Source of the DNA: Octopus bimaculoides
Lineage: Eukaryota
NCBI RefSeq assembly: GCF_001194135.2
Contig: NC_068990.1
Location: 81,251,854 to 81,315,853 of the forward strand
Direction of reading: 5' to 3'
DNA: 64,000 bases
In this document: piece after piece, positions 56,964-57,008 of the stretch
How the letters are laid out: the number at the start of each line of letters is the position of its first letter
How positions within the stretch are numbered: the stretch's first letter is position 1
Translations under genes and position numbers: made by a program
The notes under the pieces: model-generated
What the model was told of the DNA's origin: nothing
Databases searched by the model: none
The model's input: only the letters and a program-made list of their open reading frames with translations

Positions 56964-57008
56964 CTGTAAGACACGTGTTTCTGCATCGTTACGCATCATC
57001 AGCTACAA
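56964..57008 (-). ncRNA. Minimal type I hammerhead ribozyme motif with palindromic stem III
   Basis: Minus strand reads TTGTAG-CTGATGA-TGCGT-AACG-ATGCA-GAAAC-ACGT-GTC-TTACAG. Core CUGAUGA and GAAAC are intact. Stem II is 5 bp (one G-U) with an AACG loop, stem III is the palindrome ACACGTGT, the cleavage triplet is GUC, and stem I TGTAG/TTACA is 5-6 bp. The one deviation is U-A rather than G-C at 10.1-11.1. Confidence 0.8.

What the first reader, a model, noticed from the sequence alone, without database searches (positions are those of the whole stretch)
56964..57008. Near-perfect minimal hammerhead ribozyme with a palindromic stem III, not explained by any ORF
Seen: on the minus strand every conserved core nucleotide (CUGAUGA, GAAA, GUC) is present. 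Stems I (5-6 bp) and II (5 bp + AACG loop) pair, and stem III is the perfect palindrome ACACGUGU. Established: minimal type I hammerheads with palindromic stem III loops occur in Penelope-like elements and non-LTR retrozymes and self-cleave best as dimers. Inference: this is a self-cleaving RNA from a mobile element, predicted to cut between 56970 and 56969; the U10.1-A11.1 pair may slow it.
Basis: partly seen in the sequence, partly recalled or inferred. Interest (0 to 1): 0.85.

Follow-up and report, generated by a model that had tools for sequence, protein, structure and literature searches.

The report
Solitary diverged type I hammerhead ribozyme copy
The motif is real and almost certainly descends from the self-cleaving type I hammerhead RNAs that small retroelements have scattered through animal genomes, but it is a lone, weakened copy of a well-known kind, so it is ordinary.

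Summary
It has every hammerhead core nucleotide, three helices, and C17 at 56970. It is the only such motif in the window. None of 1889 decoy-core scans of the real sequence matched at this stringency.

A metagenome scan for CUGAUGA-N12-16-GAAACACGUGUC returned about 46 clear canonical type I hammerheads. They share this helix III and the 14-nt stem-loop II spacing and show strong covariation. A covariance model built from 27 of them scores the candidate at 47.3 bits. Pattern-only chance hits score 17-23 bits. The columns not used for selection make the candidate rank 1 of 118,020 positions.

It is not a "minimal" Penelope-type hammerhead. It has the canonical 6/4-5/2-bp architecture with remnants of loops 1 and 2. 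It is also diverged:
- U10.1-A11.1 replaces a G-C pair that is invariant in the family alignment.
- Stem I is weak.
- The hammerhead fold (-1.7 kcal/mol) loses to a competitor (-7.1 kcal/mol).
- Rfam gives only 23.9 bits (HH9), below gathering.

I found no tandem partner, reverse transcriptase ORF or structured unit nearby. A second, decayed relic probably lies at 24502-24559(+).

Verdict: a genuine member of a known kind, with doubtful activity and low interest.

The parts
56964..57008 (-). Whole type I hammerhead motif (45 nt): helix I, core, helix II, helix III and the cleavage site
   Evidence: Read directly. Only descriptor hit in the window.
56958..57015 (-). Extended 58-nt match to the canonical type I family model. 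It includes remnants of the loop 1 bulge (UAU at 57011-57009 against the family's UAC; U at 56963).
   Evidence: Model R1 scores it 47.3 bits, E=1e-11. On the non-selected columns it ranks 1 of 118,020 positions. The Rfam HH9 alignment covers 56949-57020.
57003..57008 (-). Helix I, 5' strand: UUGUAG (positions 2.6-2.1)
   Evidence: Pairs with 56969-56964: 6 bp made of 2 G.U, 3 A-U and 1 G-C. On its own the helix is +1.3 kcal/mol.
56996..57002 (-). Core box C3-A9: CUGAUGA
56982..56995 (-). Helix II and loop 2: UGCG-UAACGA-UGCA. It is 14 nt long, the commonest spacing in the family. The base pair is U10.1-A11.1 instead of G-C. Loop 2 reads UAACGA against the family's CAANAA.
56978..56981 (-). 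Core box G12 A13 A14 A15.1: GAAA
56971..56978 (-). Helix III palindrome ACACGUGU. As a monomer it forms 2 bp plus an ACGU tetraloop. Between two copies it forms an 8-bp duplex.
   Evidence: The self-duplex is -10.3 kcal/mol. The same helix III occurs in about 46 natural hammerheads.
56969..56970 (-). Predicted scissile bond: 3' of C17 (56970) and 5' of U1.1 (56969)
   Evidence: Follows from hammerhead numbering and established hammerhead chemistry. Not tested.
56964..56969 (-). Helix I, 3' strand: UUACAG (positions 1.1-1.6)
24502..24559 (+). Probable second, decayed type I hammerhead relic: AGACUACGCAUCA-CUGAUGA-CGUU-UAAUAA-AACC-AAAACAUGAGUA-UAAUAAUGCACA. G12 and C17 are mutated and the 3' strand of helix I is lost.
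   Evidence: R1 scores it 23.2 bits, E=2e-4 with filters off. The next best hit in the window is 11 bits. It was not selected by any pattern. Rfam does not detect it. Its flanks are unrelated to those of the candidate.

Best explanation
This is a genuine but solitary and diverged genomic copy of the canonical type I hammerhead ribozyme. In animals this motif is carried by non-LTR retrozymes and related Penelope-derived repeats.

How it would work if the minus strand is transcribed (inferred):
1. The RNA can form helices I, II and III around an intact catalytic core.
2. The 2'-OH of C17 (56970) attacks the adjacent phosphate. This leaves a 2',3'-cyclic phosphate on C17 and a 5'-OH on U1.1 (56969). 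This is established hammerhead chemistry.
3. Helix III is only 2 bp closed by the palindromic loop ACGU. Two copies could instead form an 8-bp intermolecular helix III, the 'double hammerhead'.

At this locus the copy has probably lost most or all of its activity, for four reasons:
- It has no partner copy in cis.
- It carries U10.1-A11.1 where the family has an invariant G-C.
- Its helix I is weak and rich in G.U and A-U pairs, and the outer helix beyond loop 1 is lost.
- A competing fold is more stable.

Shown here: the motif, its statistical excess, its homology-grade resemblance to a covarying natural family, and the absence of a tandem copy, an ORF or a structured unit around it.

Inferred: descent from a mobile element, transcription, and the level of activity.
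For: Motif and chance:
- The motif and its coordinates were read directly.
- It is unique in the window, with 0/300 simulated windows and 0/1889 decoy-core scans matching.

Resemblance to a natural family:
- The metagenome scan for CUGAUGA-N12-16-GAAACACGUGUC returned 56 loci. About 46 of the 57 matches are full hammerheads: 6-bp helix I, 4-bp helix II, loop 2 CAANAA and a loop 1 CUAC/U bulge. About 11 are stemless chance hits.
- The family alignment A1 has 94% of cells paired and 11 of 14 pairs with compensatory changes.
- Model R1 scores the candidate at 47.3 bits. Pattern-only chance hits score 17.3-23.3 bits, and real hammerheads outside the training set score 32-66 bits.
- A log-odds score restricted to the columns not used for selection puts the candidate at rank 1 of 118,020 window positions.
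- A second, decayed relic elsewhere in the window (E=2e-4) suggests this genome carries the family.

Divergence and weakness:
- G10.1-C11.1 is 25/25 in the family, but the candidate has U-A.
- The monomer hammerhead fold is -1.7 kcal/mol against a minimum free energy of -7.1, and fold z-scores are positive.
- The double-hammerhead dimer is -18.5 kcal/mol against a cofold minimum of -23.3. For family member L035 the double hammerhead is itself the cofold minimum, at -31.1.

Solitary status:
- Searches find no tandem or repeated copy.
- Pfam finds no domain in the minus-strand frames of 55959-58010.
- The 348-nt surrounding RNA has z=0.09.

Literature:
- The canonical metazoan type I architecture, and the statement that most motifs occur as single elements, are in PMC4209133.
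- The retrozyme link is in PMC7229834.
- The derivation of retrozymes from Penelope-like elements is in bioRxiv 10.64898/2026.07.22.740005.
Against: - No paralogous copy from the source genome could be obtained. Covariation among this genome's own copies is therefore untested, and mobile-element membership is unproven.
- Rfam is below gathering: HH9 scores 23.9 bits against 52, which scales to E of roughly 0.16 for the whole window.
- The R1 score is inflated because the model's helix III columns were fixed by a pattern taken from the candidate. The controls address this but do not remove it.
- On the non-selected columns the candidate scores 4.1 bits, far below the training members at 22-53 bits.
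- Loss of activity is only a prediction. Abundant natural families are still active with a weakened base of helix II or without the loop 1/loop 2 contacts. Examples are axolotl HHR_Amex2 with a U.U mismatch (22% cleavage in 1 h) and the mussel motif (kobs about 0.1 per min) (PMC7229834). This copy might still cleave.
Confidence: 0.65

Rival explanations
1. This is an active member of a lineage-specific retrozyme or Penelope-derived family. The U10.1-A11.1 pair and A/U-rich helix I are the family's normal state. The RNA self-cleaves at C17, either as a monomer (a 2-bp helix III with a tetraloop, as in invertebrate retrozymes) or by pairing in trans with transcripts of other copies.
For: - The core is completely intact, although a neutral relic would be expected to accumulate core mutations, as the 24502 relic has.
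- U10.1-A11.1 differs from G-C on both sides yet still pairs, which would be a compensatory change.
- Helix I is fully paired at 6/6 and helix II at 5/5.
- The loop 1 'UA...U' and the loop 2 adenines are retained.
- Invertebrate 2-bp-plus-tetraloop hammerheads cleave well as monomers, and families lacking the tertiary contacts or having a weak base of helix II are still active (PMC7229834).
- Solitary copies are the rule among the natural relatives found here.
Against: - There is no second copy, and no repeat of the flanks, within 64 kb.
- The predicted hammerhead fold occupies about 2.5e-5 of the ensemble, and a competing 8-bp helix uses loop 2 and the 3' strand of helix II.
- The double hammerhead is not the cofold optimum, unlike in a canonical member.
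- The surrounding RNA is not highly self-paired, as retrozyme RNAs are.
- G10.1-C11.1 is invariant in 25/25 relatives.
Confidence: 0.25
2. This is a chance match. An AT-rich, Gb-sized genome is expected to contain a few sequences that satisfy a hammerhead descriptor without any ribozyme ancestry.
For: - The looser decoy rate of 1/1889 per 64-kb window extrapolates to several hits per Gb.
- Rfam is below gathering.
- The helices are weak, with positive fold z-scores.
- The copy is solitary.
Against: - No decoy matched at the observed stringency, 0/1889.
- Helix III is identical to that of about 46 natural hammerheads, and the stem-loop II spacing is the family's modal 14 nt.
- The candidate scores 24-30 bits above pattern-only chance hits.
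- The non-selected columns alone rank it first of 118,020 positions, exactly where the core pattern lies.
- None of the 11 chance pattern hits has both helices.
- A second relic is present in the same window.
Confidence: 0.03
3. This is an exapted, single-copy host ribozyme of the HH9/HH10 kind, conserved in an intron and acting on the host pre-mRNA.
For: - The best Rfam match is Hammerhead_HH9. The alignment extends into a loop 1-like GUUAU bulge and a short distal helix.
- The copy is solitary, as HH9 and HH10 are.
Against: - The score is less than half of HH9's gathering score.
- No exon or gene was identified around it.
- Helices that weak and a non-canonical 10.1-11.1 pair are the opposite of the ultraconserved HH9/HH10 motifs.
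- Retrozyme-type hammerheads are reported to be excluded from introns in vertebrates (bioRxiv 10.64898/2026.07.22.740005).
- Orthologous conservation could not be tested.
Confidence: 0.03

Closest known systems
Canonical metazoan type I hammerhead ribozymes of non-LTR retrozymes (Rfam RF00163 Hammerhead_1; Cervera & de la Pena 2020, PMC7229834)
   Same: - Type I topology and an intact core.
- A 6-bp helix I and a 14-nt stem-loop II.
- A 2-bp helix III capped by a palindromic tetraloop. The GAAACACGUGUC segment is identical to about 46 natural examples.
- Remnants of the loop 1 UA/U bulge and of the loop 2 adenines.
- A low-GC context.
   Different: - U10.1-A11.1 replaces G-C.
- Loop 2 is UAACGA, not CAANAA, and loop 1 is UAU, not UAC.
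- The outer helix is missing and helix I is weak.
- It is not in a 170-400-bp tandem repeat, and the surrounding RNA is not highly self-paired.
- It scores below the Rfam gathering score.
Axolotl HHR_Amex2 retrozyme hammerhead (PMC7229834)
   Same: [quoted passage not shown]
- The base of helix II is weakened (a U.U mismatch there, U-A here).
- Tertiary contacts are probably weaker.
- Monomer activity is low, and cleavage is better as a dimer.
   Different: Amex2 sits in about 60,000 copies of a 350-bp tandem repeat. This copy is solitary and its sequence family is unknown.
Minimal hammerheads (min-HHRs) in the pLTRs of Penelope-like elements (Cervera & de la Pena 2014, PMC4209133)
   Same: - The helix III region is palindromic, which allows a dimeric active form.
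- Most copies occur as single motifs in the genome.
- They are associated with retroelements.
   Different: [quoted passage not shown]
- None of the helix-size features holds here.
- No reverse transcriptase or GIY-YIG ORF lies nearby.
Hammerhead_HH9 (Rfam RF02275), the intronic amniote ribozyme
   Same: - It is the best Rfam hit.
- Both have type I topology, a 6-bp helix I, a 5' GUUA(Y) bulge and a short distal helix.
   Different: - The score is 23.9 bits against a gathering score of 52.
- Helices II and III differ.
- There is no evidence of an intronic, conserved, single-copy status.

Membership tests
Hammerhead ribozyme, type I (canonical metazoan; RF00163) | Conserved catalytic core: C3 U4 G5 A6 N7 G8 A9, G12 A13 A14, A15.1-U16.1, H17 | tested here: met
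   CUGAUGA at 57002-56996, GAAA at 56981-56978, U16.1 at 56971 and C17 at 56970
Hammerhead ribozyme, type I (canonical metazoan; RF00163) | Three helices around the core, with helix I open-ended. Sizes are about 6 bp (I), 4 bp (II) and 1-2 bp plus a 2-4-nt palindromic loop (III) (PMC4209133). | tested here: met
   6 bp, 4-5 bp and 2 bp plus an ACGU loop. The fold is thermodynamically weak, at -1.7 kcal/mol against a minimum free energy of -7.1.
Hammerhead ribozyme, type I (canonical metazoan; RF00163) | Highly conserved G10.1-C11.1 base pair | tested here: not met
   The candidate has U10.1-A11.1. G-C is found in 25/25 distinct family sequences.
Hammerhead ribozyme, type I (canonical metazoan; RF00163) | Loop 1 / loop 2 nucleotides for the tertiary contacts | tested here: inconclusive
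   The UA of the loop 1 bulge, the 3' bulged U, and loop 2 A26, A27 and A30 are retained. Loop 1 C->U and loop 2 C->U and A->G are changed, and the outer helix is broken.
Hammerhead ribozyme, type I (canonical metazoan; RF00163) | Score at or above the Rfam gathering threshold | tested here: not met
   No hit at gathering. The best clan hit is HH9 at 23.9 bits. Only 8 of 20 loci holding evident family members gave a hit at gathering, so this criterion is conservative.
Hammerhead ribozyme, type I (canonical metazoan; RF00163) | Compensatory covariation among related copies | not testable with these tools
   The source genome is not searchable here, and four exact-ORF look-ups found nothing. Covariation was shown only for the metagenome relatives.
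Hammerhead ribozyme, type I (canonical metazoan; RF00163) | Site-specific self-cleavage 3' of position 17 | not testable with these tools
   Needs an in vitro transcription and cleavage assay.
Non-LTR retrozyme (PMC7229834) | Short tandem repeats (about 170-400 bp per monomer), each carrying a type I hammerhead | tested here: not met
   There is no tandem or dispersed copy of 55959-58010 in the window, and only one full motif. About 1 kb is readable on each side before the assembly gaps.
Non-LTR retrozyme (PMC7229834) | Low GC content (<45%) | tested here: met
   GC is 0.365 in 56001-58000 and 0.41 over the motif.
Non-LTR retrozyme (PMC7229834) | The unit RNA is predicted to be stable and highly self-paired | tested here: not met
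   The 348-nt RNA around the motif folds no better than shuffles, z=0.09. The 131-nt RNA has z=+1.26.
Non-LTR retrozyme (PMC7229834) | Expression as linear and circular RNAs of unit length | not testable with these tools
   Needs RNA-seq or a northern blot.
Penelope-like element (pLTR min-HHR; PMC4209133) | A reverse transcriptase plus GIY-YIG ORF flanked by direct repeats that carry the hammerhead | tested here: not met
   Pfam finds no domain in the three minus-strand frames of 55959-58010. No long ORF is visible in 52300-55288. Gaps at 55289-55958 and 58011-58547 limit the test.
Penelope-like element (pLTR min-HHR; PMC4209133) | [quoted passage not shown] | tested here: not met
   Helix II is 4-5 bp, helix I is 6 bp, and there is no extra nucleotide.
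Hammerhead_HH9 (RF02275) | Score at or above 52 bits, and a conserved intronic single-copy locus | tested here: not met
   23.9 bits. The locus context could not be tested.

The most novel reading that the evidence does not exclude
The copy belongs to an undescribed, lineage-specific family of active type I hammerheads. In that family the otherwise near-invariant G10.1-C11.1 pair has been replaced by U-A through a double, compensatory change. Members act as solitary dispersed units that cleave by pairing in trans through the ACACGUGU palindrome, not as tandem repeats.
Probability: 0.08. Interest if true: 0.45.

Novelty: new member of a known kind. Interest (0 to 1): 0.2.

Why it matters
The scientific significance is small. 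Type I hammerheads with short palindromic helix III regions are already known in thousands to more than 100,000 copies per animal genome. They are tied to retrozymes and Penelope-like elements.

The finding has three modest uses:
- It is an annotation. It marks a retroelement-derived ribozyme relic, and probably a second one at 24502-24559, in this scaffold.
- It illustrates that Rfam gathering scores miss many genuine type I hammerheads. Only 8 of 20 loci holding clear family members gave a hit at gathering.
- If the copy proved active, it would be a natural example that tolerates U10.1-A11.1.

Tried and rejected
- **Rfam at gathering on the whole window:** nothing. Only the permissive local search gave HH9, at 23.9 bits.
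- **Thermodynamic support:** rejected. The minimum-free-energy folds of the 45-, 72-, 131- and 348-nt RNAs are not the hammerhead and are no more stable than shuffles.
- **Tandem or dispersed copies in the window:** none found by blastn, TRF or the repeat finder.
- **A 16-nt direct repeat flanking the motif** (56841-56856 and 57173-57188, 332 nt apart): it looked like a unit boundary or a target-site duplication. It is not significant, because 21/500 shuffles reach its score.
- **Penelope-like ORF nearby:** Pfam finds nothing on the minus-strand frames of the 2-kb piece.
- **Flank similarity:** none between the candidate, the 24502 relic and the 56 metagenome loci beyond the hammerhead itself.
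- **Reaching the same or paralogous loci through exact ORF look-ups:** four tries, nothing on record.
- **Identifying the organism through a transposon-like ORF fragment (23099-23419, minus strand):** 55 homologues at 69% identity or less. Most come from ENA assemblies, and one is named as Clytia hemisphaerica. This fits an animal genome but does not identify the species.
- **My early guess of a cephalopod:** never supported by a tool, and dropped.
- **Rfam on the second relic:** no hammerhead hit.

Full report
**1. The observation**

The minus strand from 57008 to 56964 reads UUGUAG CUGAUGA UGCGU AACG AUGCA GAAA CACGUGU C UUACAG.
- Every conserved hammerhead core nucleotide is present.
- Helix I has 6 pairs: two G.U, three A-U and one G-C.
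- Helix II has 5 pairs including one G.U. It can equally be read as 4 pairs with the 6-nt loop UAACGA.
- Helix III is A15.1-U16.1 plus C-G, closing the loop ACGU. Positions 56978-56971 therefore form the perfect palindrome ACACGUGU.

**2. Is it more than chance?**

- A descriptor I wrote (core boxes plus minimum helix lengths) finds only this site on either strand of the window. It found nothing in 300 first-order Markov simulations at the strict setting and 0.05 hits per window at a relaxed setting.
- A stricter null keeps the real sequence and permutes the core boxes, giving 1889 decoys. That yields 0 hits at the observed stringency and 1 hit at helix thresholds of 5/4/2.
- A dimer-type descriptor based on a palindromic helix III also returns only this site. 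Its decoy mean is 0.0016 per window.
- At the looser setting the decoy rate corresponds to several chance hits per gigabase. The descriptor alone is therefore convincing for this window but not for a whole large genome.

**3. Rfam**

- At gathering thresholds nothing in the window matches any of the 4227 families.
- A permissive search of 601 nt gives Hammerhead_HH9 at 23.9 bits, against a gathering score of 52. E is 0.0015 for that search, which scales to about 0.16 for the whole window. The alignment extends into a GUUAU bulge 5' of helix I and a short distal helix.
- The other local hits (mir-297 and similar) lie on a TG/TA microsatellite at 56778-56840 and are artefacts.

**4. Energetics**

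- The hammerhead fold of the 45-mer is worth -1.7 kcal/mol. An alternative fold reaches -7.1, and the hammerhead occupies about 2.5e-5 of the ensemble.
- Longer contexts fold no better than shuffles: z is +0.47, +1.00 and +1.26, and 0.09 for 348 nt.
- A competing 8-bp helix pairs loop 2 and the 3' strand of helix II with GGUAUCGUU just downstream.
- The 8-bp palindrome duplex between two copies is worth -10.3 kcal/mol. The full domain-swapped double hammerhead (-18.5) is still not the cofold optimum (-23.3).
- For a natural relative (L035) the double hammerhead is itself the cofold optimum, at -31.1.

**5. Related sequences**

The source genome cannot be searched with these tools. I therefore scanned the metagenome collection for CUGAUGA-N12-16-GAAACACGUGUC. 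It returned 57 matches in 56 loci.
- About 46 are unmistakable canonical type I hammerheads. They have a 6-bp helix I, a 4-bp helix II starting G10.1-C11.1, loop 2 CAANAA, a 5' CUAC bulge context and a 3' U-GG.
- About 11 have no helices at all and are the chance background.
- The exact helix III of the candidate is therefore a common natural variant. The candidate's 14-nt stem-loop II is the modal length of the family.

An ungapped 58-column alignment of 27 of these (A1) shows:
- 94% of cells paired;
- 11 of 14 pairs with compensatory changes;
- no shuffle or slid structure approaching these values;
- G10.1-C11.1 in 25 of 25 distinct sequences.

**6. Scoring the window with the family model**

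A covariance model built from A1 (R1) was run over the whole window with filters off.
- The candidate (57015..56958, minus strand) scores 47.3 bits, E=1e-11.
- A second site at 24502-24559 (+) scores 23.2 bits, E=2e-4.
- Nothing else scores above 11 bits.

The helix III columns of R1 were fixed by a pattern taken from the candidate, so I ran two controls.
- *Pattern-only hits.* The 11 chance loci, which contain the same 19 fixed bases, score 17.3-23.3 bits. Real hammerheads outside the training set score 32-66 bits. The candidate is 24-30 bits above the pattern-only level and within the real range, at its low end.
- *Non-selected columns only.* A log-odds score uses just helix I, helix II, the loops and the flanks. 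It gives the candidate 4.1 bits, the highest of all 118,020 58-mers in the window, at exactly the place where the core pattern lies.

That value is still far below the training members (22-53 bits). The copy is clearly diverged from these relatives.

**7. What kind of hammerhead it is**

- Cervera & de la Pena (PMC4209133) define the canonical metazoan type I motif as helix I of 6 bp, helix II of 4 bp and helix III of 1-2 bp capped by a 2-4-nt palindromic loop.
- They describe the Penelope min-HHRs as having helix II of 7-8 bp, helix I of 4-5 bp and an extra unpaired nucleotide before 10.1.
- The candidate fits the canonical type, not the minimal one.
- It also keeps the UA of the loop 1 bulge, the bulged U 3' of helix I, and three loop 2 adenines that are well conserved in A1 (two at 90% or more). 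It changes loop 1 C to U and loop 2 C to U and A to G, and it has lost the outer helix.

The statement that such motifs cleave best as dimers holds for amphibian (1-bp helix III) and Penelope motifs.
- Invertebrate retrozyme hammerheads with a 2-bp helix III and tetraloop cleave efficiently as monomers: coral at about 0.8 per min and mussel at about 0.1 per min.
- Axolotl HHR_Amex2 has a 2-bp helix III and a U.U mismatch at the base of helix II. It cleaves 22% in an hour as a monomer and much better as a dimer (PMC7229834).
- The U10.1-A11.1 pair and the weak contacts therefore lower the expectation of activity but do not abolish it.

**8. Context**

- The window is a eukaryotic scaffold with about 33% GC and 14 runs of N, which lie next to microsatellites where I read their flanks.
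- It has many copies of two SINE-like repeat families of about 400-480 bp.
- It contains a transposon-like ORF fragment whose 55 homologues are at most 69% identical. One of them is named as Clytia hemisphaerica. This fits an animal genome, but the species remains unknown.
- The hammerhead lies in a 2-kb contig piece (55959-58010) between two gaps.
- Within the window there is no tandem or dispersed copy of this piece.
- Pfam finds no domain in its minus-strand frames.
- Its flanks share no similarity with those of the second relic or of any metagenome locus.
- A 16-nt direct repeat brackets the motif at a spacing of 332 nt. That is a retrozyme-like unit length, but the repeat is not statistically significant.

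Among the natural relatives:
- most are solitary on their contigs;
- L051 is a tandem repeat of 1.42 kb with a hammerhead in each unit;
- L046 is an inverted pair;
- L011 has its hammerhead about 350 nt downstream of an ORF with a weak RVT_1 match, on the same strand.

This agrees with the literature. That literature reports that most such motifs occur singly, probably as truncated elements (PMC4209133). It also reports that animal retrozymes derive from the terminal repeats of Penelope-like elements (bioRxiv 10.64898/2026.07.22.740005).

**9. Interpretation**

- *Chance* is very unlikely, about 3%. A chance core match would also need both helices, the family's exact helix III, the modal spacing, and the best window-wide match on the remaining columns.
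- *Best explanation* (about 65%): a genuine, solitary, diverged descendant of a retroelement-borne type I hammerhead. Its core happens to be intact, but its helices, its 10.1-11.1 pair and its loss of a partner make efficient cleavage at this locus unlikely.
- *Main rival* (about 25%): it is a working member of a lineage-specific family in which these features are normal. The fully intact core and the double change at 10.1/11.1 that preserves pairing speak for this. The energetics and the lack of any related copy in 64 kb speak against it.
- *An HH9-like exapted host ribozyme* is improbable, about 3%.

**10. Rfam as a criterion**

Of 20 metagenome loci with evident, covarying hammerheads, only 8 reach the Hammerhead_1 gathering score, at 35-49 bits. 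The candidate's failure at gathering is therefore weak evidence against it.

**11. Verdict**

The feature is a new member of a well-known kind. It is useful as an annotation but not surprising to a specialist, so interest is low.

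Noticed in passing
window 24502-24559 (+): Probable decayed type I hammerhead relic. It keeps the CUACGCAUCA-CUGAUGA 5' half and the loop 2 sequence UAAUAA. GAAA has become AAAA, GUC has become GUA, and the 3' strand of helix I is lost. R1 scores it 23.2 bits, E=2e-4. Rfam does not see it. Its flanks are unrelated to those of the main candidate.
   Followed up: partly
window 55984-56168 and 56545-56719: An inverted repeat of 186 bp at 83% identity encloses about 376 bp. 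It lies 250-1000 nt downstream of the hammerhead on the minus strand. It may be two copies of a small element in opposite orientation. No link to the hammerhead is evident.
   Followed up: no
window 56841-56856 and 57173-57188: A 16-nt direct repeat (14/16 identical) brackets the hammerhead with a start-to-start spacing of 332 nt. That is a retrozyme-like unit length. It is not significant against shuffles, 21/500.
   Followed up: yes
window 14782-15155, 17439-17826, 18420-18724, 20166-20650, 21452-21869, 30228-30668, 32577-32765, 37151-37734: At least eight copies, 70-94% identical and on both strands, of an interspersed repeat of about 400-480 bp that looks like a SINE. ARAGORN finds no tRNA-like head.
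   Followed up: partly
window 6367-6656, 8374-8782, 16266-16752, 21870-22098, 33063-33230, 44588-45011: A second interspersed repeat family, with at least six copies 74-90% identical.
   Followed up: no
window 23096-23419 (-): A transposon-like ORF fragment. It has 55 homologues at 69% identity or less, mostly from ENA assemblies, and one is named as an uncharacterized protein of Clytia hemisphaerica. It has no Pfam domain. This fits an animal genome.
   Followed up: partly
window 40085-40486 / 41395-41795 and 52910-53223 / 59749-59446: Two young repeat pairs: one direct pair at 92.8% identity and one inverted pair at 93.9% identity.
   Followed up: no
window 56778-56840: Permissive Rfam hits to mir-297, mir-466, mir-1277 and similar families fall on a (TG/TA)n microsatellite and are composition artefacts.
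   Followed up: yes
window: 14 N runs, for example 55289-55958 and 58011-58547: Assembly gaps total 4134 N. Where I read their flanks, (TA)n or (CA)n microsatellites lie next to them. The hammerhead sits in a 2-kb piece between two such gaps, which limits context analysis.
   Followed up: yes
L051 918-975 and 2333-2390; L046 4177-4229(-) and 4263-4320(+); L011 5718-7634 and 7977-8034: The metagenome relatives occur in varied contexts. L051 is a 1.42-kb tandem unit with a hammerhead in each copy. L046 is a palindromic pair of hammerheads about 35 nt apart. L011 has a hammerhead about 350 nt downstream of an ORF with a weak RVT_1 match.
   Followed up: partly
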